Of a stretch of DNA of 64,000 nucleotides, positions 7,073 to 42,669 are shown in pieces. Made by a program: the position numbers and the translations under genes. Source of the stretch: Hyaloraphidium curvatum SAG 235-1. Its lineage: Eukaryota; Fungi; Monoblepharomycota. Each line of letters begins with the position of its first letter. The first letter of the stretch is position 1. The notes under the pieces are model-generated. The model made no database searches. It was not told the DNA's origin and saw nothing but the letters and a program-made list of their open reading frames with translations. The stretch covers positions 310,001-374,000 of the forward strand of contig JAIVFI010000002.1 in the NCBI GenBank assembly GCA_025558095.1, in the 5' to 3' direction.

Positions 7073-8114
7073 ATGCAGCCGTTCTTCCCGCATCTCCCCG
7101 GTCGGCCGCCCCCCGCTAACCCCGCCGGTGGCCTCCCCTTTTGGCCTGCGTGGCCCGCGCCGCCCGTCGCCGCCGGCAGCCCGGTCTCCCCTCTGGATCC
7201 CGCCAGGGAGACCTCCTTCGGCAGCTCCGGCACTTTGGGGGGCGGGAACGTCACCGCCGCCGCGCCCGCCTCGCCCGCCGCCCCCACGCTCACGTCGTCC
7301 TCCCTGTCCTCAACCGCCTCGGCCCCGCTGCCGCAGCCCCCGCAGGGGTTCGTCGCCCTCCCGTATCGCGACCAGCTCGGCCGGCCTCGCTTCCTGTTCC
7401 GGGCTCGCAAGCCCGCTAGCGCCCCGTTGCGGGACCTCGACGCGGACCTCGACGGCGCCCGCGGGATCCAGTTCCCGGAGCCGTTCGTGCGAATTGTACA
7501 CGAACTACCCCAAGGAGGCAGAGGGCAGGAGGGACGAGTTTAACGGCAAGGAAGGCCAGTGGCGGTACTATGTTTGTCTTCTCCCCGCGACCCAGCGCTC
7601 GGCTGCTGACTCCTGCATTCTCGACCGCACAGAACGACATCAACCGCCGAATGCTTGCCTTTGCCTATCTCAACCCCCACCTGATGCAAGACATGAACAA
7701 GACGGAGCTCAGCGCTCTCGCTCACGCGCATCGCGACATCGAGCTGGGCAAGAAGGGCAAGCGGTCGAAGCGTGCAAAGTCGGCTGGCCTGCCCACGCCC
7801 TCCCCCGGGTGCGAAGCGCCTGGGACCCCTACCGGCAATGAAGAGGTGCAGTCGACTGGGATGAAGAGGAGGGCAAGCGCTGGGGACGTCGATCCGTGGC
7901 GGTCGCGGACCGTGTTGGCGGACGGCGAGCGGCCTTGGTACTTGTCGGGCCAGGTGCAGTGGATCGATGGCAGATTCGTGGTGATCCCGAGTTTGCCGTC
8001 GGGACATTCGGGAACGACTTGCTAGCTGGCTGGATGAAGACGGTGCCATGGCAGTGCCAAGAAGGTTTGATGCGGACGTGGACGAGCTCAACCCTGGCGA
8101 AAATGCTTTCCTAA
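7073..8114 (+). CDS. Hypothetical protein (multi-frame: introns and/or frameshift)
   Basis: Pro/Ser-rich start followed by protein-like segments in successive frames (ELYTNYPKEAEGRRDEF, NDINRRMLAFAYLNPHLM). No family recognised. Confidence 0.4.
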
Positions 8115-30560: not shown

Positions 30561-31541
30561 CTACACGACTGCGCCGTGCGCCCTCACTCTTCCGAACGTG
30601 AAATTCTGGATCGGCGCGTAGCGCACGCCACACATCCGCATCGTCTCCCGCAGGAATGTCTCGGAATGCATGCTCCCGTCCGCCCATACCATTTTCTTGT
30701 AGTTCTTTATCCCGCCGCGGCGCGGGGGCACCTCGCGGAAATAGGCCTCTGCGAGCCGCATGCGGTGCCCGTAGTGGTCCATGGTCCACGGGGTGCCGAA
30801 GCCGAACCGGTCGTTGATCCCGCCCCACGTGTCGAAGTCGGGGGCGTACAGGGTGGCGTTTTCCACCGGCTCCGGGACGGGCAGCGGGTTGAAGAAGAAG
30901 AGGTCCGGCCTGAGGTAGGCGACGACGGCGTACCGCGAGCGGTGCGGCCACCAGAGCTCAGAGACGCGGTCTAGGGAGTACTGCTGGAGCAGGAAATTGA
31001 CGAGCGAGACGCGCGGATTGTAGGGCCAGGGCTCGCCGCGCTGGAGGTAGTACTCGGGGGCGCGGGAAAAGGCAAGGCCCGCCTCGCGCGAGGAGAATTC
31101 GACGCCGGCGACGCGGACGCCGGCGCCGCGCAGGGTGGCGAGGAGCAGCCGCAGCGAGCCGGGCATGTCGAGCGGGGCGGCGAGCTCCCTGTTTGCGGGG
31201 TTCGTGGCCTCTGCCAGCGCGTACGTGTGCAGGTAGGCGTCGATTGCGGCGCACCGAGCGGCGAGCGGGCGCGCGACGCTGTCGGCAATGTTGCGCGCGA
31301 GCGACTCGTTGAGGTTCTTCAGCTGCCCGAAAAAGGCGAGCGCGCACGCGGGGGCGGCCGCGGCCGGCGGGTCCATTTCGCCCGCGACGGCGGCGAGCTC
31401 GGCGGCGAGGCCGCCCGCCGCGGGAACCGGCGCCGGACGCGGCGCAGGCGGTTCGCGCAGGGCCCACAGCCGGAGCGCGGGGGCCGCGGCGGCGCCCACC
31501 GTCGCCGCCGCTGCGACCGCCCGGAAGACGCCGAGACGCAT
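30561..31541 (-). CDS. Uncharacterised GT-like protein (ALxFFG / RPD / GINDRF / HSE family)
   Basis: CALAFFGQLK, YAVVAYLRPDL, WGGINDRFGFG, HSETFL, FGRVRAHG; signal anchor. Confidence 0.6.
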   Translation of the reverse strand: MRLGVFRAVAAAATVGAAAAPALRLWALREPPAPRPAPVPAAGGLAAELAAVAGEMDPPAAAAPACALAFFGQLKNLNESLARNIADSVARPLAARCAAIDAYLHTYALAEATNPANRELAAPLDMPGSLRLLLATLRGAGVRVAGVEFSSREAGLAFSRAPEYYLQRGEPWPYNPRVSLVNFLLQQYSLDRVSELWWPHRSRYAVVAYLRPDLFFFNPLPVPEPVENATLYAPDFDTWGGINDRFGFGTPWTMDHYGHRMRLAEAYFREVPPRRGGIKNYKKMVWADGSMHSETFLRETMRMCGVRYAPIQNFTFGRVRAHGAVV

Positions 31542-31918
31542 TGGCGGGCTCCGGCGATTTGCGCGGTCCTCTCGCGCCGGCGAGGTCGGGCAGTGGCCCG
31601 GGGCAGGAAGAAGCCGGCAAGCGGCGGGCGCGGGCGTCGGCGGGTTGATTTGGGTGAAGGGCCCGCGGGCGGAAGTGCGGCCAAGTGAGGCGGCGACCGG
31701 GGTCGTGGGCCTGGGCCCTTGGAACCCGTTGCGCCCGCCCGTCCAAAACATGATCCGAGCGCCGACCGTTTCGTGCTTAGTGGACTCGAGAAGCTAGTGA
31801 AATGCTGAGAGGAGTTGAGCACGCCTGGACGTCTACCTCGGTGTGACGAGGTTCTGCGGGCTGCCGTCGAGGGCGGTTCTGCGCCCATCCCACCGCGGCC
31901 GCTAACGTCGCGTCTGGA

Positions 31919-32671
31919 ATGGGGACACGCGACGCGGCCCTCCGCGCGGCGGCGCTGTGCGCGCTTGCCGTGTTCGCCGCGTTGCTCGCTGCCGGCGGGG
32001 CGGGCGGGGCGGGCGGGGCGGGCGGGGCGGGCCGCGCGCGTGTGCTGCTCGTGGCGAGCAACGCGCGCGTGCGCGAGCTGCCGCTGCGCGCGCTGGCGGC
32101 GGGCGCGGCGCGCGCGGTGTTCTTCAACCACGCGCCGCACTTTGCGTTTGTCGACGCGGCGGCGGGGCTGCGGCCGCGCGGGCGGCTGCCGTACTCGATG
32201 GTGCTGCGCGGCGCGCACGGCGGGCGCACCGGGCCGTCGTACTTCCTCGGCGTGCGCAACGAGGCCGCCGCGCCGCTGGCCGCGCGGCTGTGCGGCGCCG
32301 AGGAGGTCGTGCTGGTGGTGCGCGCTGACGCGCGTGGCGACGCCATGCTCGCGTGCTCCGACGCCGACGCGGTACGCGCCGCCCTGGCCGCCTGCGGTCG
32401 CGCCGCCGCGCTGGTCGTGGTGCGCGTGGAGGACACCGTGCCCTTCTACCCCACGCACCCCAACTCGACGCACTGGCTGCCGCAAATACCCACCACGGGC
32501 TTCACAACCGCCATGCGATACATCGTGCAGGGCGCCAAGCCCGTGTTGCTGGCCTTCAACGCGTCAGAGTACCCGAAGGACCAGCGGCGCACCTCGCACA
32601 ACTACCACTTCGAAACCACCATGATCAGCTTCCTGCACGCCGCGCGCCTCGTCGAGCTCGTCAACCCATGA
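31919..32671 (+). CDS. GT29-like (sialyltransferase-like) protein
   Basis: Signal anchor; degenerate sialylmotif L (VLLVASN..AVFFN), motif S-like PTTGFTTAM..VLLAF, and motif VS HxxxxE (HNYHFE) followed by L-H-x-x-x-L-V. Confidence 0.65.
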   Translation: MGTRDAALRAAALCALAVFAALLAAGGAGGAGGAGGAGRARVLLVASNARVRELPLRALAAGAARAVFFNHAPHFAFVDAAAGLRPRGRLPYSMVLRGAHGGRTGPSYFLGVRNEAAAPLAARLCGAEEVVLVVRADARGDAMLACSDADAVRAALAACGRAAALVVVRVEDTVPFYPTHPNSTHWLPQIPTTGFTTAMRYIVQGAKPVLLAFNASEYPKDQRRTSHNYHFETTMISFLHAARLVELVNP

Positions 32672-33584
32672 TGGCTACGCGGTCGCCAGGCGCTCCCGAT
32701 CCCACGGGGAAAAGGCGACTCCCTGCGGCATTCTGGGCCGGCCCTGGATTGAAGCGGGTTCTGCACCCCCATCCCTGCATGCCTTGAGGGTATTCGTGAA
32801 ACAATACCCGAAAGGTAGGATAGGGGGCAAATCAGGGGGCAATACAGGTTCATCGAGTTCAAGGGAACGCGTGTTCGCGGGAAAGCTCGGAGGGAGGCAT
32901 TGAGGATCAGCATGGCCAGCTACCGAGCGTTCGTCAGGCCTTGAGGCCACGGAAGTACCTTGGACTTGCAATCGTTGCATCCACGGGAACGACTGATGTT
33001 GCCTCCTGGGGTTCTTGAGCAACTCGCCGAGGTCTGGGGCCGGCTCGTGTTTGTGGACGACAGAGGGCAGGACTGCCTGATCGTTTCGTGTCCCGGATCC
33101 AACCATGTCACGAACAATTTCGAACAAGCGGTTCCACGGGCCGAGCCGGCCATCATCGTTTGCCTCTCCCGAACCTGATAGCATTCATCTGCAAGGCGCA
33201 TAGGGTAGTTCGCATCTGATGGCTGTGGCACTTAGACGCTTCCCTCGTCGTACTGTAGCTGCCGCCTTTGGCGAACATCATTCTAGGACCCAATGTGCTA
33301 TTTGCTCAGTATCTACCAATCTACCTAGCTCAATTCTCTCCCATGCCAATCGTCCTGATCCGCTGATCCGCTGTATCGCGTCCCGCTTTGCGAATTCGAC
33401 TTTCACGAAGGCTTGGGCTTCAATGGCGGCCGCTGTGGTGCAGTGGCCAATTGAGTAGGCCGACTATATTTCTATAGATGAGCGGGCGGTATTTTTCGCC
33501 TGTGCGGCCGCCAAAGCCCTTCAACAGCAAACAATGGAAACCAGCTAGCACACAAAACCGGCCGTGCGAATGGGCGCATACAGC

Positions 33585-34637
33585 ATGGGCCCCGCTGTCG
33601 AGCTCGTCCCCGGCCGCTGGGTTGGCCCCGGCCGGCCGACGTTCTTCATCGCCGAGGCAGGGCTCAACCACAACGGCCGGCTCGACGCCGCGCTGCGGCT
33701 CGTCGACGCGGCCAAGGCGGCCGGCGCCGACGCCGTCAAGTTTCAGAAGCGCACGCCGGCTTCCATGCTGACGCGCGCGGCGCTCGCGGCGCCATACGCC
33801 GGCCCACACTCGTTTGGCGCCACGTACGGCGAGCATCGCGCCGCGCTCGAGCTGTCCGAGGCCGACTGGGACGCACTGGCCGCGCACGCCGCCCGCGCTG
33901 GCATCGCGCTGGCCGGCTCGGCGTGGGACGAGGCTTCCGCCGACCTGCTGGTGCACCTGGGCGCGCCGTTCCTCAAGTTGCCTTCGGCGGACCTGACAAA
34001 CTTCCCGCTCATGGCACACGCCGCGCGCTCGGGCCGGCCGCTGGTGCTCTCCACCGGCATGGCTGACATGGCGCTGGTCCGCCGCGCCGTCGCACACGCC
34101 AGCGCCTTTACGACACGGCTGGTCCTGCTGCATTGCACCTCGACGTACCCCGCACCGCCCGAGGCGTGCAACCTCCGCGCGATCCATGCGCTTGCTACCA
34201 CTTTCCCGGACGTCGTCGTGGGCTACTCGGGCCACGAGCAGGGCACCGCCATCGCCTGCGCAGCCGCCGCCATCGGTGCCGCCGTGGTTGAGAAGCATCT
34301 GACTCTGGATCGTCAAATGAAGGGACCTGACCATGCGGCATCCCTGGAACCGGAAGAGTTTGCTGATATGGTCCGGCGGGTGCGCGAAGCCGAGAGGGCC
34401 ATGGGCGACGGCATCAAGCGGCTCATGCCTGGGGAGGATGCGGTGAGGGCCAAGCTGGCCAAGTCGCTCGTTGCCGCGCATGACATACCGCGGGGCACGG
34501 TCCTCACGCCGGAAATGCTTGTCGCCAAGGGGCCCGGCACGGGCATTGCGGTTTGCGACGCGGAGCTGGTCCTGGGAAGGATGGTACTGCGCGACATCGC
34601 AGCCGACACACTGCTGGACCCGACCATGTTTGGGTGA
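33585..34637 (+). CDS. NANS: Sialic acid (Neu5Ac/Kdn-9-phosphate) synthase, NeuB/NANS family, with SAF domain
   Basis: ELVPGRWVG, IAEAGLNHNG, GADAVKFQK, PY..HSFGATYGEH, STGM, LHCTSTYP, GYSGHE, EKHLTLD, GPDHAASLEP, KSLVA. Alternative ATG at 33570. Confidence 0.96.
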   Translation: MGPAVELVPGRWVGPGRPTFFIAEAGLNHNGRLDAALRLVDAAKAAGADAVKFQKRTPASMLTRAALAAPYAGPHSFGATYGEHRAALELSEADWDALAAHAARAGIALAGSAWDEASADLLVHLGAPFLKLPSADLTNFPLMAHAARSGRPLVLSTGMADMALVRRAVAHASAFTTRLVLLHCTSTYPAPPEACNLRAIHALATTFPDVVVGYSGHEQGTAIACAAAAIGAAVVEKHLTLDRQMKGPDHAASLEPEEFADMVRRVREAERAMGDGIKRLMPGEDAVRAKLAKSLVAAHDIPRGTVLTPEMLVAKGPGTGIAVCDAELVLGRMVLRDIAADTLLDPTMFG

Positions 34638-34728
34638 AGATGGCCGATAGCCGTCGGTCAGCACCAGGTGGCTGGGCCTAGATGGCGAGACGTTCATTGT
34701 GCATCGTACGCGATGGACGATATCAGCC

Positions 34729-35724
34729 TCAAGGCGGCCCAATCTCTTCTTGACTGCCAGTTCCTGCATCCCATCGAACCCGGAGCGGGCAGCAAGAGGT
34801 CCTCCTCTTCAAGTACCCGCACGTGCCATTGCCGTCCACGAGCATTTTCTCGTAGTAGGCTTTGTCCTTCTTGAAGGCCGTTACCGAGGTCCGCGCCAGC
34901 TTGCGCTCGGCCTCCTCCCGCGATTTCCACATGTAGTGGTAGAGGGAACCGGCGCTGTGGGCAGGGTTGGAGAGGAAGTAGAACGCTGGGTGTTCGCGAC
35001 TGCTCGGGTGCACGGCATCCTCGCCAGCGGCATTTGCCGGCGGCAGGGAAGTCCCGTTTGCAATGATAGGATGGTGCGCGGTCGTCATGCCCCGGATTGC
35101 TGAGCACCGCACAAGGGCTTTGAACGCTGCTGACCTCGGATGGGTGCGCGGTAGGCACGATGCGTAGTTGGCCAAAACGCCGCCGGCAGGACGTTTTTGG
35201 TGGTCTTTCCCGTCAAAGATGACCCAGTTGAGGTAGACCGCGGGCCGGCCATCGAACCGCGGTTGCGAGAGGAAGGCCGGCAGCGAGGGCCGCGCCCCTG
35301 GTAGTACCGGGAACTCGTCGACGTCAAAGAACGCCATCCAGCCATTTAAAGGGCAGAGCTGGATGCAGCGATGGTAGGCGTCCCCCTGCGGCGAACGGGC
35401 GAAGGGGACAGGGCCGTGCACACCTCCTGCCGGGAACACGTCTACGTCTGGAACGTCCAGGAAAGCCGGCCGCCGCGTGGAATGGGGGGCGATGCCGTCG
35501 TCGTACACCAAGAAGCGCGAGACGCCGAGCAGGCGGTGGTAGTTGAGCCACTCGGGCAGGTCATCTGCCGCGTCCTTCGCAATGATGCACGCGTGCACGG
35601 GCGGGCTACCGACCTCACTGCCGCTTCGGACAGGACCGCGGAGTCCGTTGGTCAGCTGAAGTAGTGAAAGTGCGGCGAGCGCGGCGCCGGCAAGCACAGC
35701 AACGCGGCAGCGCAGGAGCAACAT
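34729..35724 (-). CDS. GT92/GT2-like glycosyltransferase
   Basis: CIIAKDAADDLPEWLNYHRLLGVSRFLVYDD, WMAFFDVDEF, LNWVIF, YHYMWKSREE. Confidence 0.85.
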   Translation of the reverse strand: MLLLRCRVAVLAGAALAALSLLQLTNGLRGPVRSGSEVGSPPVHACIIAKDAADDLPEWLNYHRLLGVSRFLVYDDGIAPHSTRRPAFLDVPDVDVFPAGGVHGPVPFARSPQGDAYHRCIQLCPLNGWMAFFDVDEFPVLPGARPSLPAFLSQPRFDGRPAVYLNWVIFDGKDHQKRPAGGVLANYASCLPRTHPRSAAFKALVRCSAIRGMTTAHHPIIANGTSLPPANAAGEDAVHPSSREHPAFYFLSNPAHSAGSLYHYMWKSREEAERKLARTSVTAFKKDKAYYEKMLVDGNGTCGYLKRRTSCCPLRVRWDAGTGSQEEIGPP

Positions 35725-35761
35725 TTCCCAGAGTCGGCAAGACCAAGAAGGAGAGACACCG

Positions 35762-36469
35762 ATGCCCCGTGCAGCGTGCATCGCCGTGGTCCCCGCCCGC
35801 GGCGGGTCCAAGGGCATCCCGCGAAAAAATCTCGCCGACTTTCTCGGCGGACCGCTATTCCTCTGGCAGGCGCGCGCGTGCGCGGACTCCGGCGTTTTCG
35901 ACGCAGTGGTGGTCAGCTCCGACGATTGTGAAGTACTGGACGCCGCGCGTGCGGCCGGGTTCCTCGCACACGAACGGTCTGCCGAGGCGTCTTCCGACGG
36001 GGCGTCTTCGGAAACGGCGGTGGCGGAGGCCGCCGCCTGGTACCGGTCGCTGGGCCGCCCCGTCGACGTTGTATGCCTCGCACAGCCGACGTCCCCTCTG
36101 ACCGCCTCAGAGGACTACGCCGCCGCATGGACGGCCTTTGAAGACGCGGGAGCGGACTCGCTCGTCACTGTCTGCCGAAGAAAGGTGTTTTTGTGGCGGC
36201 AAGCAGATGAGGACGAGAGGCTCGCCCAGCCGGCAAACTACGACCCGCGCCGGAGGCCGCGCAGGCAGGATTGGGACGGGGTGCTGGTTGAGAACGGCGC
36301 CTTCTACTTCACGCGGAGCTCGTTGTTCGACGAGCTGGGTTGCAGGCTCGGCGGCCGCACAGTGGCCTACCAGATGGAAGAGTGGAAGGCGACGGAGATT
36401 GACACGCCCGAGGACCTGGAGGTGTGTAGGGCGATCGGGCTGGCGAGAGGACTGAAGTGGGAAGCGTAG
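35762..36469 (+). CDS. CMAS: CMP-sialic acid synthetase (acylneuraminate cytidylyltransferase), single domain
   Basis: VPARGGSKGIPRKN, VVSSD, QPTSP, RPRRQDWDG.LVENGAFY, EIDTPED. Confidence 0.95.
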   Translation: MPRAACIAVVPARGGSKGIPRKNLADFLGGPLFLWQARACADSGVFDAVVVSSDDCEVLDAARAAGFLAHERSAEASSDGASSETAVAEAAAWYRSLGRPVDVVCLAQPTSPLTASEDYAAAWTAFEDAGADSLVTVCRRKVFLWRQADEDERLAQPANYDPRRRPRRQDWDGVLVENGAFYFTRSSLFDELGCRLGGRTVAYQMEEWKATEIDTPEDLEVCRAIGLARGLKWEA

Positions 36470-36534
36470 ATGCCGTGTCAGGGTGGCAATTCGGGGTCGA
36501 AAAAGTATGCACTGGCCGGCCGCATCCGCCCCAA

Positions 36535-37578
36535 TCAGAGCTCCTCCACATCAGACTTGCTCCCGTCCGAAGCGGACTCCGCGACGAGCCAGCGCAAGGT
36601 CGTATGCAACCGAGGCCTAGGCTGTATCCCTCCTTCCGCCTGCGCCGGCCAAGGCTCGGTACCACCAACCGAGTAGAGGTACGACGCGACGCCGTTGGCC
36701 GCGCATCCCAGGACGAAACCGGGGCCCAAGGCCCGCCCAAACCAAACCCAGCTGGCAACTCCCGAGATCAGCAGGCTCCCTGCGGCCGCGAACGCCTTCC
36801 ACACGTTGTCCCCCAGCCGCAAGACGGCCGCGGTCAGCTGCCCCAGCACGGCTAGACAGAGCACCAGGAGCCACGCCGCGCGGTTGAATCCCGCCACGGG
36901 GACGTGCGACATGCTGAGGAGCGGGAGCCAGGTCAACAGGGTGCCGAGAGCGTAGAGCTGTGCGTTCTGCGCATGCGGGCTCTGTGGGGAGTGTTTAAGC
37001 AGCAGCTCGTTGTACACGCCTGCGGCGGCCGACACGATGATCGAGGCTGCCAGCGCGGCCCACCCGGCGGGGGACGCCGAAAATGGGGCGCGAGCTGGGT
37101 GGGAGGCGATCGCGGCAGCGGCGGGGCCAATCGCGCCTTCGCTATGGGCAAGCGCGGTGCCGACACACAGCAGCACCAAGCCGCCCAGCTGGCGGCGCGA
37201 AAAGTCCCGGCCCGCCGCGGCCATCAGGCTCGCGGCTAGCGGCACCTTGAGACCACCGAGCAGCTGCACCGTGGCGGGGTCGGCGGCGCGTGCTGCAACA
37301 AATAAGAGATTGTTGTTGAGCGCGTAGGCCGCGGCCAGCATCGCGGTGCGCGCGATACCGGCCGCTGTGGGCACGTCGGACGGCAAAGGCCCGGCCGCGG
37401 CAAGCTGGCCCAGGGACAGCGCGAGTTTGGCCGCCTCGGCCAACGCGGGCACGGCGGCGGGCGCGAAGTCATAGCCGCCCTTGGCGTTCCGCGCCAGCGC
37501 CGCGAGCACCGGTCGGGCCGCGTCGGCAACCGCCAGCGACGCGACCGCGGGCACCGCTAGCCACTGGCGCGCGCGCAT
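36535..37578 (-). CDS. SLC35A-family nucleotide-sugar transporter (candidate CMP-Sia transporter)
   Basis: AEAAKL, YALNNNLLF, DPATVQLL..LKVP, AGVYNELLLK, QNAQLY, DNVWKAFA; multiple TM segments. Confidence 0.9.
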   Translation of the reverse strand: MRARQWLAVPAVASLAVADAARPVLAALARNAKGGYDFAPAAVPALAEAAKLALSLGQLAAAGPLPSDVPTAAGIARTAMLAAAYALNNNLLFVAARAADPATVQLLGGLKVPLAASLMAAAGRDFSRRQLGGLVLLCVGTALAHSEGAIGPAAAAIASHPARAPFSASPAGWAALAASIIVSAAAGVYNELLLKHSPQSPHAQNAQLYALGTLLTWLPLLSMSHVPVAGFNRAAWLLVLCLAVLGQLTAAVLRLGDNVWKAFAAAGSLLISGVASWVWFGRALGPGFVLGCAANGVASYLYSVGGTEPWPAQAEGGIQPRPRLHTTLRWLVAESASDGSKSDVEEL

Positions 37579-37747
37579 CGCGCGCAGGGGCCGACGCCGG
37601 CGCGGCAGGGAGGTCCGGACACGTGCGTGTAAACAACCCGTACTCGGCAGACGGTATCTGTGGCCTTCCATCGCGCTAATGCGGTTTCCAGTTTCTAGAC
37701 TCTTAGCTGAAAACCAATGACCACATTAATGAATAAACAAGGCAGAG

Positions 37748-38229: not shown

Positions 38230-39181
38230 GGGGCTCGTCCCTCCATGCTCTGCCGACCCCATCCAGTCCATCACCAGCGGGCAGCACCGCACTACGTGGT
38301 CCCGCAGATAGGTGCAACTCTCGTTCGTCCAGCCCACAGCTTCTGGTAACTACCCGGCGGCCGTGGGCGTACTAGGGGTCCGGGGTGTTGACCATGGCAA
38401 GAGCCTCCTCCCTGGATTTGTACATGTAGTGGAACAGCGCCGCAGGGCCATCGTGGGAGGGGTTGTCCAGCCACTGACTGGGGCATGCCGCACACGTGCC
38501 AGGCCTGCGCGCCCTCTCGTTCACCTCGAACGAGCCCGCAGCCAGCTTTGCCTTGTGCGCGGTGCGCATGCCGAGCAGGTCGCGGCACTGCGCTAAGGTC
38601 TTTGCTCCCGACCGGGTCGTGCCGAACGACCGCGGCACGCAAGTTGAATAGCTCGCCAGCGTGCCCTGTGCTGGCCTGGTCTCGTACTCCCTGCCCACCA
38701 GGACGACCCAGTTCAGCAGCACCGCCGGGGCGTTCCGGAATCCGTCCAAGAACCGCGGCAGCCAGGGGCGCTCCGTCCGCAGCACAACGAACTCGTCGAC
38801 GTCCAAAAGGCCCATCCAGCCGCCCGCGGGACAGCGTGCCGCGCATTCGGCGTAGGCGCGGTGCTGCACCGAATCGGCGAACGCGACGTCGCCGCGCGGG
38901 CCGCGGGGCGGCACGGGCCGCACGTCGACATCCGGCGCGGCGTGCGGGAACGGAGGGCGCGAACCGTCGTCGAACACGAGGAAGCGGGAGACGCCAATGG
39001 AGCGGTGGTAGTCGAGCCACTCGGCGGCGTCGGCGTTGGCGTCGCGCACGAGGAGGCACATCCACACGGGCGGGCCCGCGGGCGCCTGCGGCGCCCACGA
39101 CAGCCGCAAAGCAACGGTGGCGCTCGAAATGACACACAGCAGTGCACGACGGCGAGGCCCGCGAGCGACCTCCACTACCAT
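38230..39181 (-). pseudogene. GT92-like paralogue of 34729-35724 with disrupted C-terminus
   Basis: EWLDYHRSIGVSRFLVFDD, LLDVDEF, FHYMYKSREE, then a stop at 38372. The homologous tail (YQKL; NESCTYLR..CCPL) continues in other frames. Confidence 0.75.
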
Positions 39182-39238
39182 TGTTTAAATATTGAATGTG
39201 GGTTCCCGGGGTATGCATTGCTCGGCGCCGCCTTCCGG

Positions 39239-40401
39239 ATGCCTCTGCTGGTGCGCGCCGCAGCGATGGCGGCGCTCTTCGGGCTGAGCTGGGCGCTCTG
39301 GGCCGGCGGCGGCGGGCGCGCCTCGGGGCTGCGCGTGCACGCAGCGGGCAACCTCGGCGACGAGATGGAGACGACGCCGCTGCTACGAGCGCTGGCCGCG
39401 TGGGGCGTCGCCATGGACGTGTTCCTCGCGCCGTGGCTGGCGCGGGAGGACCGGCTGGGTCCCCACGTGCTGCGGACTTCGCGCCACTGGCGCCTGACGC
39501 GTGCATCTCGGCGTTGCCGCTGGCTGACGCTTCCGGCTACGACGCCGTGATAGAGGCGCCGAGGCCCAAGGTGCTGCACGATTCGCTGCCCGCCTCGCCG
39601 CCGCATTTCTGCACGCCGCTCGTGCTGTTCAGCATCGCCATCGCAAGCCAGCAGGTGCCAGTGCCCCCCTGCGTCGCGCTCGCGGTGTTCCGCGAGCCCG
39701 TTTCGCAGAGGAGGTTCCTCGCTGCCGCAAAGGCCGCGGGCAGGACGCCGCCGCCCACCTTGATGAGCGGCGACCTGTCCCACATCCTCGAGGTGTCGCA
39801 GCCCCTGCTCGTGGCATGGAGGGCACAGCACCGCGCCGCTCTGGAGGCCGCCGCCGTTCCGAAGGACTGGGTCCTGCTCTTTTCCCGCTCCAACAACTTT
39901 GGGCGCCGTGTCTCGGTGGTCCGCAACGACACCGTTTCCGTGCGGCACGTGAATGGCACCGTCGAGCACCACCCCGTCGCCTCGGTCGTCTTTGCCAGCA
40001 CCTCGGTCGTCGGGATGGAGGGCGACGCCGCGGTTTTCGCCTTGCTCGCCACCCGGGGCGTGCCCAGGGGCAGGCTCGTCACCTGCACAGGGATCGAGCA
40101 GCTCTGGGCGCTCATCAGCCTGGCCCCGGCCGTTTACACGGACCGCTACCATGCAGGTGTCGCCTCCCACCGGCTCGGCGTGCCCGTGCGGGTCCTCGTA
40201 CACTTGGCCGAGAGGACAAAGATGAAGGGGTTGCAAGAGATACTGGTACATCCTACTGAGACAGTGCGGAAGTGGAACGCTGAGGCGCTGGATGCGCTTA
40301 AGGGGTTCCTGGAGGCCCTGCCGAGACCGGGGTTGGGGAGGCGGGCGCCACCACCTTGCCCGGGGAGGCCAGAGGGCCTGCCTTCAGGTTTCATGCCATG
40401 A
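39239..40401 (+). CDS. Polysaccharide pyruvyl transferase-like protein; frame change near 39500
   Basis: GNLGDEM in the first frame; FREPVS, GDLSH and TDRYHAGVASHRLGVP in the second. The frames join by a frameshift or by a possible 53-nt intron 39501-39553. Confidence 0.7.
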
Positions 40402-40426
40402 TGGGTCATGAAGAGATCAATGCCCT

Positions 40427-42151
40427 TTATAGGCGCCCGGTCGTTGTTGCTATGGTCGCTCGGCCCTCCATGCGGGCCCCCGCGTGCTCCCGCAGGATCC
40501 CCCGCTCCCTCCACCCGACCAGGCTCCGCGCCAGCGCCACCAGCTCCTCCTTCCTCGCGTCCGAAGCAAACGGGCACGCCCGCAGGAGCTGGTACAGGTC
40601 TACCGCGACGTTGCCCATCCACAGCGCGGGCGGCACGGGGAACGGCCCCGCAGCCGGGATAGGAATGGGCACTACATCGGGCAGTCCGACAGAGGACAGG
40701 TAGTCTCGGAACTTGAACCCGTCCCCACGGAGGCGGCGGCCCCCCGAGAAAGAGACCCAGGAGACGGGTATGCCGTAGGCGTGTGCAGCGATGAGGCCGT
40801 GCAAGGAGGAGGTGAGGAGATGCGAGCAGGTGTGCAGGGCATCTGGGAACGCTAGCGGTTCCGACTGGATGTCCAGTACGCGCACCGGCCAGCGCGCCCC
40901 GTCCGTGACGAAGTCGGGGAAGGGCTCAACGCGCTGCTCACGAAAATGCTGAACTAAGCACAGAAATGCAGGCCGGTGGTCCGGGCGATGGAAAAGCGGG
41001 AGGAGCAGTACTGGGTCGCCGTAGACGGTAACATTAATGCCGCCCTCGCGGCAGATGCGGCCGGCGGTCAGGGGCCCGCGGACCGCGTGCACTGCCCGGG
41101 GAGCGCGAAATGAGGTCGTGGAGGTCGAGTTGATAAAGCCATAGCCATAGACCTCGTCGCGCGGGCCGACGTCCTCGAGTCCACTGCCGATGAACCTGTA
41201 CACGGGGCCATCACGCGATGCGACGGGGTCCTTGTGATGCAGGGCGGGACGGTCCGAGAGCAGCGAAGCGAGCACAGGGTTCAGGCGGTCACCCCAGTTG
41301 AGGGCAACGCCCCCGGAGATGGGAAATGCGACGAGCACGGGTACGGCGGTTAGGACATAGTCCCGCGGCCGGTTTTTCCAAGGGGAGGGATCAGGCGCCG
41401 GCGGCAGCGCCACCTCGTCAGGGACCGCGAAAGGCCTCGTGCACATCGGGAAAGGCATGTACAGCGAGCCGTTGCCGGCGGTACGGGCGCGCTCGTGCCA
41501 ATCCTTCCAAGCGGCCCCGTATGCCGCTGCTACCAGTGCGGCGGCGGGGTGGGGCGGGGGCGGCGCGGCGCACTGGCGGCCGGGGAGCTCCAGAACGGCC
41601 CCGGGGCCAAAGGCCAGTGCGAGCCTGGCGACATATTCAGCGGCAGCGTCCGCTGGCGGTGCAACCGAGTCGAAGAAGCCCACGGCGTCGATGGCCTCGC
41701 GCCGCACCAGCACCGCGGCGGGGTCCGCACACTCCGGGGCCAGCGCGGCGACGGCGGCCGGGTGCGCGCTCAGGCCGTCCCACAGCGCCGCAGCGTTTGC
41801 TTCGGTGTGCGCGGCAAAGAGGTACGCGTCCGCCACGACCAGCTTCGCCGCGGCGTTCCAGAGCGCCGCGGGGGCGTCCCCGGGCGCGGCGCCGCACACG
41901 ACCAGGTCGGCCGCCGCACCGACGACGGCGTCGCACTCAGCGGCCGCCGCCACGCAGCGCGTGCCGCGCGGGCAGCCGCCCGCCGCCGCCGCCACTGCGA
42001 GCACGCCCGGCAGGCCGCTTCCCGCGGCGGGGGCGGGGCCGGAAGCGGGCACGCCGCGCACGCCGGAATCGCGGAACAGCGCGGCCGCCGCCGCAAGCAA
42101 TGCTGCCGCCGCTCCCGCGAGAAGCACGCGCAGCGCCCGGGCTTGCGCCAT
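40427..42151 (-). CDS. Pyruvyl transferase (ExoV-like) with N-terminal degenerate GT2-like region
   Basis: NWGDRLNP, IGSGL, AVRGPLT, YGDPVLLLP, TSSLHGLIAAHAYGIP, FKFRDY; upstream LVRREAIDAVGFFD. Confidence 0.85.
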   Translation of the reverse strand: MAQARALRVLLAGAAAALLAAAAALFRDSGVRGVPASGPAPAAGSGLPGVLAVAAAAGGCPRGTRCVAAAAECDAVVGAAADLVVCGAAPGDAPAALWNAAAKLVVADAYLFAAHTEANAAALWDGLSAHPAAVAALAPECADPAAVLVRREAIDAVGFFDSVAPPADAAAEYVARLALAFGPGAVLELPGRQCAAPPPPHPAAALVAAAYGAAWKDWHERARTAGNGSLYMPFPMCTRPFAVPDEVALPPAPDPSPWKNRPRDYVLTAVPVLVAFPISGGVALNWGDRLNPVLASLLSDRPALHHKDPVASRDGPVYRFIGSGLEDVGPRDEVYGYGFINSTSTTSFRAPRAVHAVRGPLTAGRICREGGINVTVYGDPVLLLPLFHRPDHRPAFLCLVQHFREQRVEPFPDFVTDGARWPVRVLDIQSEPLAFPDALHTCSHLLTSSLHGLIAAHAYGIPVSWVSFSGGRRLRGDGFKFRDYLSSVGLPDVVPIPIPAAGPFPVPPALWMGNVAVDLYQLLRACPFASDARKEELVALARSLVGWRERGILREHAGARMEGRATIATTTGRL

Positions 42152-42669
42152 CGGCTGCAATCCATGAACACTCGTCCGAGCTAGACACGCTTCGATTGGG
42201 ACGCACCCACGAACCGCCGACGCTGTCTGACAGAAGTCGACATTGTCTGTTTCCCCCGAGGCATCCAACACGCCGCCTGCCGAAGTCGTGGCCATTCATT
42301 GCATGCAAGCCAAATTTGTCTCCGAAAGCCGCGGAGAGGAACGCAGCAGATGTGGATCGAGAGGCCGGTAGCACAATCGATCCTCCCCATCCAGAACCGA
42401 CTGATTCTCTGGCATTCAGCTTGCCGCCGTCCTATAGCCGACTTAGTCTGGTTCAGAGCGCATTCTAGTCGCAGCTTAGCTGCTCCGGAAGGTGTGAGCT
42501 CTTCCGCGGTGAGTCAGCCGCCGCAGCGGGGAAACACACCCGGGAGGCAGCAAGGCGGTCGCTACTTATGGTAGACCGAGTGCCGTCATGCGGCAGAATC
42601 CAGTCCGTGCTACAGAAGGTGCGGCAGCAGACACGAAGTGATCGGGAGCCATCGGGAGTGAACGTAGGA

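What the first reader, a model, noticed from the sequence alone, without database searches (positions are those of the whole stretch)
31919..37578. Clustered sialic-acid/Kdn biosynthesis and sialylation pathway in a fungal-type genome
Seen: within 5.7 kb lie intact, intronless genes for a NeuB/NANS synthase, a CMP-Sia synthetase, an SLC35A Golgi transporter and a GT29-like protein, covering synthesis, activation, import and transfer. Known: fungi are generally held to lack de novo sialic acid synthesis, and animal genes for it are dispersed. Both enzymes carry motifs I recall from human NANS/CMAS (ELxPGRWVG, PY..HSxGxTYGEH; RPRRQDWDG). Inference: this is a eukaryotic nonulosonate gene cluster. 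No GNE/NeuC epimerase is in the window, so Kdn from mannose-6-P (as described for the haptophyte Prymnesium) is the simplest product.
Basis: partly seen in the sequence, partly recalled or inferred. Interest (0 to 1): 0.93.

Follow-up and report, generated by a model that had tools for sequence, protein, structure and literature searches.

The report
Kdn-type sialic acid cluster in a fungus
The early-diverging fungus Hyaloraphidium curvatum carries, side by side on a 1.3-Mb chromosome piece, intact genes to make, activate and probably import into the Golgi a sialic-acid-type sugar (most likely Kdn), a pathway that fungi were thought to have lost; the enzyme that attaches the sugar is not identified.

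Summary
They are a NANS-like NeuB synthase (33585-34637 +), a eukaryote-type CMP-sialic acid synthetase (35762-36469 +) and an SLC35A transporter (36535-37578 -). The "GT29-like" ORF (31919-32671 +) is a real coding gene. No family, profile or fold test places it in GT29.

An exact protein match on the same contig identifies the host as the fungus Hyaloraphidium curvatum.

Kdn is the best-supported product:
- The closest solved relative of the synthetase is the Prymnesium CMP-Kdn synthetase.
- The synthetase carries that enzyme's Kdn-gatekeeper arginine, where mouse has leucine.
- The genome has no NeuC/GNE-type, AGE or NanE route to ManNAc.

The transporter keeps Tyr214, the residue of mouse CST that discriminates cytosine.

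The closest relatives of synthase (57%) and next-closest of synthetase (49%) lie together with an SLC35A gene on uncultured-organism contigs, probably eukaryotic, so the triad is conserved.

Nothing is shown biochemically, and the RNA evidence is only suggestive. I rate it a new member of a known kind.

The parts
30561..31751 (-). Type-II-membrane-like protein of unknown family (395 aa). It neighbours the cluster and is a second, weaker candidate for a lumenal transferase.
   Evidence: Coding-type GC (0.70/0.57/0.88). No Pfam or NCBIfam hit. One paralogue on contig C21, 53% identical. AlphaFold model of low confidence (pLDDT 57) with no informative fold match. Included by adjacency only.
31919..32671 (+). 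ORF250: an orphan protein with an N-terminal membrane anchor.
33585..34637 (+). NANS-like NeuB-family nonulosonate synthase (predicted Kdn-9-phosphate synthase), intronless, single copy.
   Evidence: Pfam NeuB 265 bits plus SAF 44 bits. NCBIfam NeuB_NnaB 326.7 bits, below the 399.65 equivalog cut-off; PseI 222.6 bits. Asp at N. meningitidis E134 and Gly at R314; the Asp is the archaeal/eukaryotic state described in PMC8208679, where eukaryotes carry Val at R314. Single copy. Nearest relatives are 57% identical, on environmental contigs that also carry CMAS and an SLC35A gene.
34729..35724 (-). GT92-family glycosyltransferase with signal anchor, transcribed divergently from the synthetase (the ORF extends to 35817). 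It probably builds the acceptor glycan.
   Evidence: Pfam Glyco_tranf_2_4 45 bits and Glyco_transf_92 28 bits. In the Atlas, 28 of 30 nearest clusters are GT92, with scores up to 0.97. 46% identical to the gene at 38372-39181. It contains the motif FDVDEF, seen in the sequence.
35762..36469 (+). Eukaryote-type CMP-sialic acid synthetase, predicted to be CMP-Kdn specific. It is the only CTP_transf_3 gene in the genome.
   Evidence: Pfam 75 bits. Best PDB hit is 9t4z PpNeuA at 170 bits, then mouse CMAS at 146 bits. Arg195 aligns with PpNeuA Arg196. Single copy. It forms a clade with two environmental eukaryote sequences (SH-aLRT 98) that is sister to P0126-P0129 (99).
36535..37578 (-). Divergent SLC35A-family nucleotide-sugar transporter, predicted CMP-sugar (CMP-Kdn) importer of the Golgi.
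   Evidence: Pfam Nuc_sug_transp 109 bits. It aligns to mouse and maize CMP-sialic acid transporters at 76-79 bits. It keeps E52, K55, Y98, N102, K124, S188, N210, Y214, T260 and K272 of mouse CST. It has Leu, not Gln, at positions 105 and 253. A canonical paralogue on C21 has Ala at position 214. A related SLC35A gene sits beside NeuB on the environmental contigs.
38372..39181 (-). Second GT92-family glycosyltransferase, paralogue of the gene at 34729-35724.
   Evidence: Pfam Glyco_tranf_2_4 43.7 bits and GT92 21.6 bits. 46% identity to the first copy. GC3 0.85.
39196..40401 (+). Polysaccharide pyruvyl transferase-like gene. The frame is uncertain because an ORF on the opposite strand overlaps it.
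   Evidence: Pfam PS_pyruv_trans 24.9 bits, just under the 25.3 cut-off. Codon-position GC is ambiguous between the two strands. Included by adjacency.
40427..42295 (-). Polysaccharide pyruvyl transferase-like gene (622 aa).
   Evidence: Pfam PS_pyruv_trans 38.4 bits. Coding-type GC. Included by adjacency.

Best explanation
This is a chromosomal gene cluster of the fungus Hyaloraphidium curvatum (Monoblepharidomycetes) for a sialic-acid-family sugar, most likely Kdn.

Proposed route:
1. The NANS-like NeuB enzyme condenses phosphoenolpyruvate with mannose-6-phosphate to give Kdn-9-phosphate (inferred).
2. An unidentified phosphatase releases Kdn (inferred; no gene assigned).
3. The eukaryote-type cytidylyltransferase makes CMP-Kdn. 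The family is shown; the specificity is inferred from the gatekeeper arginine.
4. The adjacent divergent SLC35A transporter carries CMP-Kdn into the Golgi. The family is shown; the substrate is inferred from conserved CMP-contact residues and from conserved linkage with the pathway genes.
5. In the lumen, a still unidentified transferase adds Kdn to glycans. ORF250 is the best positional candidate. The flanking GT92 enzymes probably help to build those glycans.

The genes are intronless and match the surrounding genome in base composition. They are not a recent bacterial insertion.
For: Families and intact ORFs.

Host and integration: an exact match to a Hyaloraphidium curvatum GenBank protein on the same 1.3-Mb contig. 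Intron-split HSP90 and actin genes elsewhere in the assembly. GC of the cluster is like its flanks.

Kdn over Neu5Ac:
- The best solved relative of the synthetase is the Prymnesium CMP-Kdn synthetase.
- Arg195 aligns with its Arg196. The R196L mutation switches that enzyme to Neu5Ac, and Neu5Ac enzymes have Leu there (PMC12934254). Mouse CMAS has Leu at this position in the same alignment.
- All three genomic 2-epimerases are WecB type (349-383 bits against a 210 cut-off) and not NeuC type (65-72 bits against 236).
- No AGE and no NanE in the genome.

Not a Kdo pathway: there is a single CTP_transf_3 gene and it is of CMAS type, and there is no KdsC-like phosphatase.

Synthase subfamily: E134D and loss of R314.

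Transporter: Tyr at the cytosine-discriminating position 214, Thr260, and no Gln at the two beta-phosphate positions. An internal control paralogue has Ala at 214.

Conserved linkage: contigs L035-L037 and L042 carry SLC35A, NeuB, methyltransferase, CMAS and HAD phosphatase genes together. Their NeuB is 57% and their CMAS 49% identical to ours. None of 80 more distant CMAS loci, apparently mostly bacterial, has an SLC35A gene, although 64 have NeuB nearby.

A run guessed to be RNA has one colinear contig over 33927-37750 with no splice joints.
Against: - There is no biochemical evidence for any step, and no nonulosonate has been reported from this organism. No paper in the library holds both 'Hyaloraphidium' and 'sialic'.
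- The run that covers the cluster is only guessed to be RNA, and contigs cannot show expression level or strand.
- The gatekeeper rule rests on one mutational study. All 120 nearest homologues have Arg, including bacterial and archaeal ones of unknown specificity. Trout CMAS uses Kdn with Leu at this position.
- No phosphatase and no proven transferase were found.
- The transporter is very divergent (76-79 bits to CST). It lacks T128, which is required in SLC35A1, and also Q101, Y117 and Y121. Two other paralogues in the genome also carry Tyr at position 214, so that residue alone does not single this one out.
- The genome holds at least 8 DegT sugar aminotransferase genes and 3 WecB epimerases, so other substrates for the synthase cannot be excluded.
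Confidence: 0.6

Rival explanations
1. The cluster makes Neu5Ac, or another 5-N-acylated neuraminic acid, rather than Kdn. ManNAc or ManNAc-6-P would come from UDP-ManNAc made by the three WecB-type epimerases on the same contig, followed by an unrecognised hydrolase or kinase.
For: Three UDP-GlcNAc 2-epimerase genes lie on the same contig, at 210, 524 and 555 kb. By my own knowledge, NANS-type synthases in animals accept both ManNAc-6-P and Man-6-P. The synthase scores highest against the NeuB_NnaB model.
Against: The epimerases are clearly of the non-hydrolysing WecB type. The genome has no AGE and no NanE. The synthetase has the arginine that clashes with the 5-N-acetyl group in PpNeuA.
Confidence: 0.15
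2. The product is a legionaminic- or pseudaminic-acid-type di-N-acyl nonulosonate. It would be fed by the organism's unusually large set of DegT aminotransferase/dehydratase genes.
For: The genome has at least 8 DegT genes. The related environmental islands place NeuB and CMAS beside a DegT-dehydratase fusion and hexapeptide acetyltransferases. The best NCBIfam hit of the synthetase is PseF, at 119.8 bits and below its cut-off.
Against: There are no DegT, hexapeptide acetyltransferase or NeuC-like genes in the window. The synthase scores 327 bits for NeuB against 223 for PseI and belongs to the NANS-like subfamily. The synthetase is far closer to eukaryotic CMAS and to the CMP-Kdn synthetase than to bacterial enzymes. 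The gatekeeper Arg argues against a 5-N-acyl substrate.
Confidence: 0.07
3. Synthase and synthetase are a real nonulosonate pair, but the neighbouring SLC35A gene is not their transporter. It would import a UDP-sugar, for example UDP-galactose for the flanking GT92 enzymes, and CMP-Kdn would be used elsewhere or carried by another paralogue.
For: GT92 genes flank the transporter on both sides. The transporter lacks T128, Q101, Y117 and Y121 of CST. Paralogues at C2:512 kb and C2:529 kb also carry Tyr214 and have Ala105 and Phe106, as CST does.
Against: It has Tyr214 and Thr260 and lacks the two Gln residues that bind the UDP beta-phosphate. An SLC35A gene that aligns with it over the first half, visibly better there than the own-genome paralogue L021 does, is linked to NeuB and CMAS on independent environmental contigs that have no GT92 beside it.
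Confidence: 0.25
4. The cluster is an assembly chimera, a contaminant, or an inactive relic.
For: Nearest homologues are only 50-66% identical, and none of the named ones among the listed hits is fungal. RNA support is only a guess.
Against: The genes lie 340 kb inside a 1.3-Mb contig that encodes a GenBank H. curvatum protein. A second public run holds pieces of the stretch at 99% identity or more. All ORFs are intact, and the catalytic and substrate-contact residues I checked are conserved. Codon-position GC matches host genes. Zn2Cys6 and YIF1 genes are in the same window.
Confidence: 0.03

Closest known systems
Kdn pathway of the haptophyte Prymnesium parvum: Kdn-9-P synthetase plus CMP-Kdn synthetase PpNeuA (PMC6200933, PMC12934254; PDB 9t4z)
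   Same: The synthetase is the best solved match (170 bits, aligned over residues 2-221) and shares the Arg196 gatekeeper and the RPRRQDWDG motif. As in Prymnesium, no ManNAc-forming epimerase is needed, because the pathway starts from mannose-6-phosphate.
   Different: The host is a fungus, not an alga. Here the genes lie adjacent to each other and to an SLC35A transporter and GT92 genes; the 2018 paper does not mention a transporter or sialyltransferase and worked from transcripts. In the tree the fungal synthetase is not inside the haptophyte/dinoflagellate clade but in a separate clade with uncultured eukaryotes. Nothing has been assayed here.
Animal sialylation pathway: NANS, NANP, CMAS, SLC35A1, GT29
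   Same: The synthase is NANS-like: E134D, R314 not conserved, and the PY..SFG.TYGEH segment. The synthetase scores 146 bits to mouse CMAS. The transporter aligns to mouse SLC35A1 with most CMP-contact residues kept.
   Different: No GNE, no recognisable GT29 and no assigned NANP. The synthetase has Arg where mouse has Leu. By my own knowledge the animal genes are dispersed, whereas these are clustered. The sugar pocket of the transporter differs (T128A, Y117V, Y121G).
Bacterial nonulosonate (nab) gene clusters, including the Bacteroides thetaiotaomicron Kdn-9-P synthase / phosphatase / CMP-Kdn synthetase set
   Same: Synthase and cytidylyltransferase are physically linked; 64 of 80 metagenomic CMAS loci also have NeuB nearby. 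Members of the same NANS-like synthase subfamily and the same Arg-type synthetase subfamily occur in bacteria.
   Different: The cluster contains SLC35A and GT92 genes. SLC35A (Nuc_sug_transp) rang in none of 14 bacterial and archaeal control genomes. Many related bacterial synthetases are fused to a HAD domain; this one is not. The genes have host-like codon composition and sit in a fungal chromosome. No close bacterial donor exists: identity is 55% or less.
Uncultured-organism islands L035-L037 and L042 (JGI 3300075486; ENA ERZ19571025 and ERZ19570767)
   Same: An SLC35A gene, NeuB+SAF and CMAS lie within about 6 kb. Their NeuB is 57% and their CMAS 47-49% identical to the fungal genes, the closest NeuB seen. 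The CMAS clades are sisters.
   Different: These islands add a methyltransferase, a HAD phosphatase, hexapeptide acetyltransferases, a TPT transporter, a DegT-dehydratase fusion and a GT61-like gene. They lack GT92, ORF250 and pyruvyltransferase homologues. GC is 53% against about 67% here. The organism is unknown.

Membership tests
NeuB / sialic acid synthase family (Pfam PF03102 + SAF PF08666) | Full-length NeuB domain followed by a C-terminal SAF (antifreeze-like) domain | tested here: met
   NeuB 265 bits over profile positions 1-241 of 241; SAF 44 bits.
Bacterial N-acetylneuraminate synthase NeuB (NCBIfam TIGR03569 equivalog) | Score above the curated equivalog cut-off of 399.65 bits | tested here: not met
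   326.7 bits. Arg314 of the N. meningitidis enzyme, which PMC8208679 calls essential for the bacterial enzyme's activity, is Gly here.
NANS-like (archaeal/eukaryotic-type) synthase subfamily | Asp in place of catalytic Glu134, and loss of Arg314 in the SAF domain (PMC8208679) | tested here: met
   The motif SADL has Asp at the E134 position, and KGPG has Gly at the R314 position. In the alignment of the 120 listed NeuB hits (the window's own protein among them) plus two environmental NeuB sequences, 121 of 122 have Asp and none has Arg.
Kdn-9-phosphate synthase activity | Uses mannose-6-phosphate plus PEP | not testable with these tools
   I could find no sequence determinant for this. It is inferred from the absence of a ManNAc route and from the partner synthetase.
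Eukaryote-type CMP-sialic acid synthetase (CMAS) | CTP_transf_3 fold, closer to eukaryotic CMAS than to bacterial NeuA or KdsB | tested here: met
   PF02348 75 bits. PpNeuA 170 bits, mouse CMAS 146, bacterial NeuA 73 or less, KdsB 29 or less.
Kdn-specific CMAS | Arg at the position of PpNeuA Arg196 (Leu in Neu5Ac enzymes) | tested here: met
   Arg195 in the motif GCRLGG aligns with Arg196 (chain residue 214 of 9t4z); mouse has Leu. The activity itself was not tested.
SLC35A nucleotide-sugar transporter (Pfam PF04142) | Nuc_sug_transp domain over the gathering score | tested here: met
   108.9 bits against a cut-off of 27. The match starts at profile position 86. The N-terminal helices align to CST only weakly.
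CMP-sialic acid transporter SLC35A1 | Nucleobase pocket E52, K55 and Y214; no Gln at positions 105 and 253 (PMC8411240) | tested here: met
   E79, K82 and Y240 are present; Leu123 and Leu273 occupy positions 105 and 253. A control paralogue on C21 has Ala at 214. Two other paralogues also have Tyr there.
CMP-sialic acid transporter SLC35A1 | Sugar pocket K124, T128, S188 and K272, all required for activity | tested here: not met
   K142, S214 and K292 are present, but T128 is Ala146. Y117 is Val, Y121 is Gly and Q101 is Asn.
CMP-sialic acid transporter SLC35A1 | Transport of CMP-sialic acid | not testable with these tools
   This needs a proteoliposome assay or Lec2 complementation.
GT29 sialyltransferases (for ORF250, 31919-32671) | Match to Pfam PF00777, or to solved GT29 sequences | tested here: not met
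   No hit at E 10 or less. No PF00777 match in the genome, although that search rang in no control genome either. A profile of ORF250 plus P0244 finds no sialyltransferase in the PDB.
GT29 sialyltransferases (for ORF250, 31919-32671) | GT29 fold | tested here: inconclusive
GT29 sialyltransferases (for ORF250, 31919-32671) | Sialylmotifs L, S, III and VS, with the L-S disulfide cysteines | not tested
From memory, the segments VLLVASN...AVFFNHAP, IPTTGF...LLAFN and HNYHFE resemble motifs L, S and VS with similar spacing, and the two cysteines are absent. These segments are conserved in P0244. This is a lead, not a test.
GT92 (for 34729-35724 and 38372-39181) | Match to PF01697 / PF13704 | tested here: met
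   PF13704 45.1 and 43.7 bits. PF01697 28.3 bits (cut-off 23) and 21.6 bits. In the Atlas, 28 of 30 nearest clusters are GT92, with scores up to 0.97.
Hydrolysing UDP-GlcNAc 2-epimerase (NeuC / GNE type) | Score above the NeuC_NnaA equivalog cut-off of 235.9 bits | tested here: not met
   The copies scanned against NCBIfam score 64.6 and 72.2 bits for NeuC and 349-383 bits for WecB. The third copy has the same Pfam score as its duplicate.

The most novel reading that the evidence does not exclude
Hyaloraphidium retains, or regained as a unit, a complete Golgi Kdn-sialylation system. In this reading ORF250 is the founding member of a very divergent GT29-related (or wholly new) Kdn-transferase family. 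The conserved SLC35A-NeuB-CMAS triad would then be a eukaryotic 'sialylation operon-like' module that moves or persists as a block among microbial eukaryotes. Fungi as a kingdom would not lack sialic-acid-type capping, and an unrecognised transferase family would await discovery.
Probability: 0.15. Interest if true: 0.85.

Novelty: new member of a known kind. Interest (0 to 1): 0.62.

Why it matters
The published reconstruction of eukaryotic sialylation (PMC5811610) states that no GT29 sequence is found in Fungi. It also states that Fungi lost SLC35A1 and replaced CMP-NeuAc synthase by CMP-Kdo synthase. This fungus, in contrast, has a CMAS of the algal/animal type, a NANS-like synthase and a CST-like transporter, physically clustered. 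This is the first such case I could find for the kingdom: no paper in the library links Hyaloraphidium or early-diverging fungi with sialic acid.

It gives a culturable organism in which to test whether a fungus makes Kdn, which transporter carries CMP-Kdn, and which enzyme transfers Kdn. No sialyltransferase is mentioned in the Prymnesium pathway paper either.

The conserved linkage of an SLC35A gene with NeuB and CMAS in a second, uncultured lineage is a rare example of a eukaryotic glycosylation gene cluster. It offers a guilt-by-association route to the substrate of an otherwise unclassifiable transporter.

Tried and rejected
- A word-indexed homologue search with the transporter returned only itself, because Ala-rich words swamped the candidates. 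I therefore made no labelled SLC35A phylogeny and relied on residue mapping.
- ORF250: an exhaustive HMMER search gave one weak homologue. Its 1.6-kb contig gave no context. A viral-contig scan found nothing. The own genome has no paralogue. The PDB profile search, Foldseek and the Atlas shape search were all uninformative.
- The o396 gene (30561-31751): the model is of low confidence and Foldseek gave only generic Rossmann-like hits.
- The KdsC-like phosphatase model and the HAD protein of the environmental island found no convincing counterpart in the genome.
- The two DAHP_synth_1 genes I take to be aromatic-pathway enzymes, not KdsA. I did not test this.
- The metagenome scan with the CMAS alignment returned only relatives of 47% identity or less, apparently mostly bacterial. 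It found no further SLC35A-linked cluster.
- I could not name the organism behind L035-L037 and L042, because the 38-kb contig holds no marker gene.
- The careful CMAS tree did not finish, so the quick IQ-TREE tree is reported.
- I considered and rejected a Kdo pathway. The only cytidylyltransferase scores 29 bits or less to KdsB structures, and NeuB is not KdsA.
- I considered and rejected recent bacterial transfer. No donor exceeds 55% identity, codon composition is host-like, and a eukaryote-only gene is in the cluster.
- No exon-joined protein model was built or searched. The intron-containing SLC35A paralogues were compared piece by piece.
The hole at 33392-33926 in run X1 may reflect its silent human-likeness filter, and I treat it as no finding.

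Full report
WHAT IS THERE.
- NeuB+SAF synthase, ORF 33564-34637 (+). NeuB scores 265 bits over the whole profile. The annotated product is 350 aa, from 33585.
- Glyco_tranf_2_4 / GT92 transferase, 34729-35817 (-). The likely start is 35724, just before its membrane anchor.
- CTP_transf_3 cytidylyltransferase, 35762-36469 (+).
- Nuc_sug_transp transporter, 36535-37671 (-). The annotated start is 37578.

Codon-position GC (about 0.70 / 0.55 / 0.80-0.93) identifies all of these as coding frames. It also picks out further genes just outside the interval:
- a 395-aa membrane protein at 30561-31751 (-);
- a second GT92 gene at 38372-39181 (-), 46% identical to the first;
- two polysaccharide-pyruvyltransferase-like genes at 39196-42295.

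Further out lie a GT61-like giant ORF, a Branch (GT14) gene, a Zn2Cys6 factor and YIF1. Rfam finds no RNA family in the window.

HOST AND INTEGRITY. The window is G000:C2:310001-374000, in a 31.9-Mb assembly of 55 contigs; C2 is 1,315,085 bp long.
- A WecB-like ORF 100 kb upstream on C2 is identical to GenBank KAI9033036.1, 'UDP-N-acetylglucosamine 2-epimerase [Hyaloraphidium curvatum]', recorded on a contig of that same length.
- Hyaloraphidium is, to my knowledge, a monoblepharidomycete chytrid once taken for a colourless alga.
- HSP90 and actin genes elsewhere in the assembly are split by short introns.
- The GC of the cluster (0.65-0.68) lies within the range of the window.
- Two public runs of the same coded organism hold the stretch with no differing letters.

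A chimera or contaminant is therefore very unlikely.

THE SYNTHASE.
- It falls below the curated cut-off for bacterial NeuB (326.7 against 399.65 bits) and scores lower still for PseI (222.6).
- Aligned to the N. meningitidis enzyme, it has Asp at catalytic Glu134 and Gly at Arg314 of the SAF domain. PMC8208679 describes the Asp as the archaeal/eukaryotic state and reports Val in place of Arg314 in eukaryotes.
- The same signature, with the segment PY..SFG.TYGEH, runs through the nearest homologues listed, bacterial members included. It marks a subfamily, not a kingdom.
- The listed homologues are at most 55% identical. The few named ones are bacterial MAGs. The two best with usable context sit on eukaryotic contigs: one beside TAF1 and RPL5, the other beside Hint and C2H2 genes.
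- The gene is single-copy.

THE SYNTHETASE. This is the most informative gene.
- Against all PDB sequences it scores 170 bits to 9t4z (PpNeuA, the Prymnesium parvum CMP-Kdn synthetase) and 146 bits to mouse CMAS. It scores 73 or less to bacterial NeuA enzymes and 29 or less to KdsB.
- PMC12934254 shows that Arg196 of PpNeuA clashes with the 5-N-acetyl group. R196L switches preference from Kdn to Neu5Ac, and Neu5Ac enzymes usually have Leu there.
- Thr89, Gln110, Leu164 and Lys165 of the paper all fall on the expected letters of the 9t4z chain at an offset of 18. Arg196 is therefore chain residue 214, in the motif CRLG. This motif aligns letter for letter with GCRLGG (Arg195) of the fungal protein, whereas mouse has Leu.
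- All 120 nearest homologues share this Arg. The whole subfamily is of the 'Arg type', which weakens its value as a discriminator within the subfamily.
- This is the only CTP_transf_3 gene in the genome, so there is no separate CMP-Kdo synthetase.

ROUTES TO THE SUBSTRATE.
- The genome has three Epimerase_2 genes, all on C2. They are WecB type (349-383 bits against a cut-off of 210) and not NeuC type (65-72 against 236).
- No GlcNAc 2-epimerase and no NanE were found.
- Mannose-6-phosphate needs no dedicated enzyme.

The phosphatase step is open. No KdsC-like gene and no counterpart of the HAD gene of the related islands was found. The Prymnesium study also left phosphatases aside as redundant.

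THE TRANSPORTER.
- It is highly divergent. A word-indexed search found only itself.
- It aligns to mouse and maize CMP-sialic acid transporters at 76-79 bits. These are the only SLC35A structures that matched, so the hit itself says nothing about substrate.
- Mapping the residues of PMC8411240 onto that alignment gives the following.
  - Kept: E52, K55, Y98, N102, K124, S188, N210, Y214, T260 and K272.
  - Positions 105 and 253, where the UDP-galactose transporter has the two Gln that bind the beta-phosphate, are Leu.
  - Changed: Q101N, Y117V, Y121G and T128A.
- Tyr214 is the residue proposed to discriminate cytosine from uracil; SLC35A2 has Gly there.
- As an internal control, the genome has about five SLC35A genes, four of them on C2. 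The canonical one on C21 has Ala at position 214. The pair at C2:512 kb and C2:529 kb also has Tyr.
- The residue evidence favours a CMP-type substrate but is not unique to this paralogue. Those paralogues contain introns or frame breaks, and I compared them ORF piece by ORF piece.

CONSERVED LINKAGE.
- In the quick tree, the fungal synthetase groups (SH-aLRT 98) with two environmental sequences of 65% identity. These lie on high-GC contigs, one of which also carries TAF8.
- This group is sister (99) to P0126-P0129.
- The contigs carrying P0128 and P0129 (33-38 kb, 53% GC) hold an island in this order: SLC35A, NeuB+SAF, methyltransferase, CMAS, HAD hydrolase, hexapeptide acetyltransferase, TPT transporter, DegT-dehydratase fusion, GT61-like.
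- Their NeuB is 57% identical to the fungal one, the best seen. Their CMAS is 47-49% identical.
- Their SLC35A gene aligns with the fungal cluster transporter over the first half, visibly better there than the fungal paralogue L021 does. The called frame then breaks down, as at an intron.
- Among 80 further CMAS loci from metagenomes (47% identity or less), 64 have NeuB nearby and none has an SLC35A gene.
- Linkage of transporter, synthase and synthetase is thus shared by two lineages. This is the best argument that the transporter serves this pathway.

THE TRANSFER STEP IS NOT ESTABLISHED.
- The two classifiable transferases are GT92 and carry a DVD motif. To my knowledge GT92 enzymes are UDP-galactose-dependent galactosyltransferases, so they more likely build the acceptor.
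- ORF250 is nearly an orphan. It has one homologue at E 2.7e-5 among 1.84 billion representatives. It has no paralogue, no viral relative and no sequence similarity to any solved sialyltransferase.
- Its model is poor (pLDDT 54).
- Segments conserved between ORF250 and its one homologue resemble sialylmotifs L, S and VS as I remember them. I could not test this against real GT29 sequences.

I therefore record 'GT29-like' as an open lead, not a finding.

EXPRESSION. Run X1, labelled 'RNA?' as a guess, gives one colinear contig over 33927-37750, with no joints. Contig depths across the stretch range from 2 to 585. That unevenness looks more like RNA than DNA, and the lack of joints would agree with intronless genes. 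Contigs cannot show strand or level, so this is only suggestive.

COMPARISON AND NOVELTY. Each enzyme type is known, and Kdn synthesis from Man-6-P is established in Prymnesium. The following points are new:
- The host kingdom. PMC5811610 reports no GT29 in Fungi and infers loss of SLC35A1 and replacement of CMAS by CMP-Kdo synthase.
- The physical clustering with a Golgi transporter in a eukaryote.
- The recurrence of that triad in a second lineage.

No paper in the library links Hyaloraphidium or early-diverging fungi with sialic acid. I classify this as a new member of a known kind, with interest 0.62. The value would rise sharply if Kdn is detected and ORF250 proves to be its transferase.

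Noticed in passing
G000:C2:524066-525142 (-) and 555154-556230 (+) (loci L011, L012); also C2:209632-210648 (+) (L010): Three WecB-type (non-hydrolysing) UDP-GlcNAc 2-epimerase genes in a fungus, all on the window's contig. Two are near-identical inverted copies of about 780-790 aa, with an N-terminal membrane anchor and a C-terminal domain of about 330 aa that has no Pfam match. This would be a membrane-anchored epimerase fusion, possibly lumenal.
   Followed up: partly
G000: C24:606464, C4:312183, C37:182668, C39:299371, C21:392039, C5:904111, C29:586661, C20:342878: At least eight DegT/DnrJ/EryC1 sugar aminotransferase genes lie in large open frames (618-1127 aa), which is unusual for a eukaryote. 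The one on C5 is colinear with an SDR dehydratase, like the 835-aa DegT-dehydratase fusion of the environmental island (34% and 54% identity). This suggests a rich repertoire of rare amino-deoxy sugars.
   Followed up: partly
G000:C2:512244-513181, 529153-530007, 562768-563787; C21:520730-521773: Four of about five SLC35A transporter genes are on contig C2, near the epimerase fusions. The copies at 512 kb and 529 kb are near-identical, and the 512-kb copy is split over three frames (frameshifts or introns). Contig C2 from 200 to 570 kb looks like a glycosylation-rich region.
   Followed up: partly
window:32377-33323: In run X1 one contig of depth 585 covers the last 295 bases of ORF250 plus 650 bases of lower-GC (about 53%) sequence upstream of NeuB. 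It is bounded by Illumina adapter letters at both ends, and neighbouring contigs have depth 2-60. It may be a long 3' UTR, an abundant separate RNA, or a coverage artefact of the very GC-rich coding part.
   Followed up: no
window:39196-42295: Two adjacent polysaccharide pyruvyl-transferase-like genes lie next to the Kdn genes. To my knowledge, pyruvylated galactose is the acidic cap of fission-yeast N-glycans, so two systems for acidic capping may sit side by side.
   Followed up: no
L036 / L042 (ENA ERZ19571025 scaffold_100), L037, L035 (JGI 3300075486): A glycosylation island of 33-38 kb in an unidentified organism, probably a eukaryote. It holds SLC35A, NeuB, methyltransferases, CMAS, HAD, hexapeptide acetyltransferases, TPT, a DegT-dehydratase fusion, GT61-like, DUF5672 and a GDP-mannose-dehydratase-like gene. 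No taxonomic marker is on the contig.
   Followed up: partly
L016:3663-4448 and 7092-7877 (ENA ERZ25074310): A tandem duplicate of a CMAS gene 65% identical to the fungal one, on a 68%-GC contig that also carries a TAF8 gene. No NeuB or SLC35A gene lies within the 14.6 kb.
   Followed up: partly
window:31984-32042: A (GGC/GGA)n-like simple repeat encodes a Gly/Ala run directly after the membrane anchor of ORF250. The read tool skipped it as a repeat, and contigs break there.
   Followed up: no
window:35724-35817: The GT92 gene and the synthetase are head to head. Their likely start codons are only about 40 bases apart, and their ORFs overlap if the first ATG of the GT92 frame is used. Their 5' ends must therefore overlap or share a very short bidirectional promoter.
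   Followed up: no
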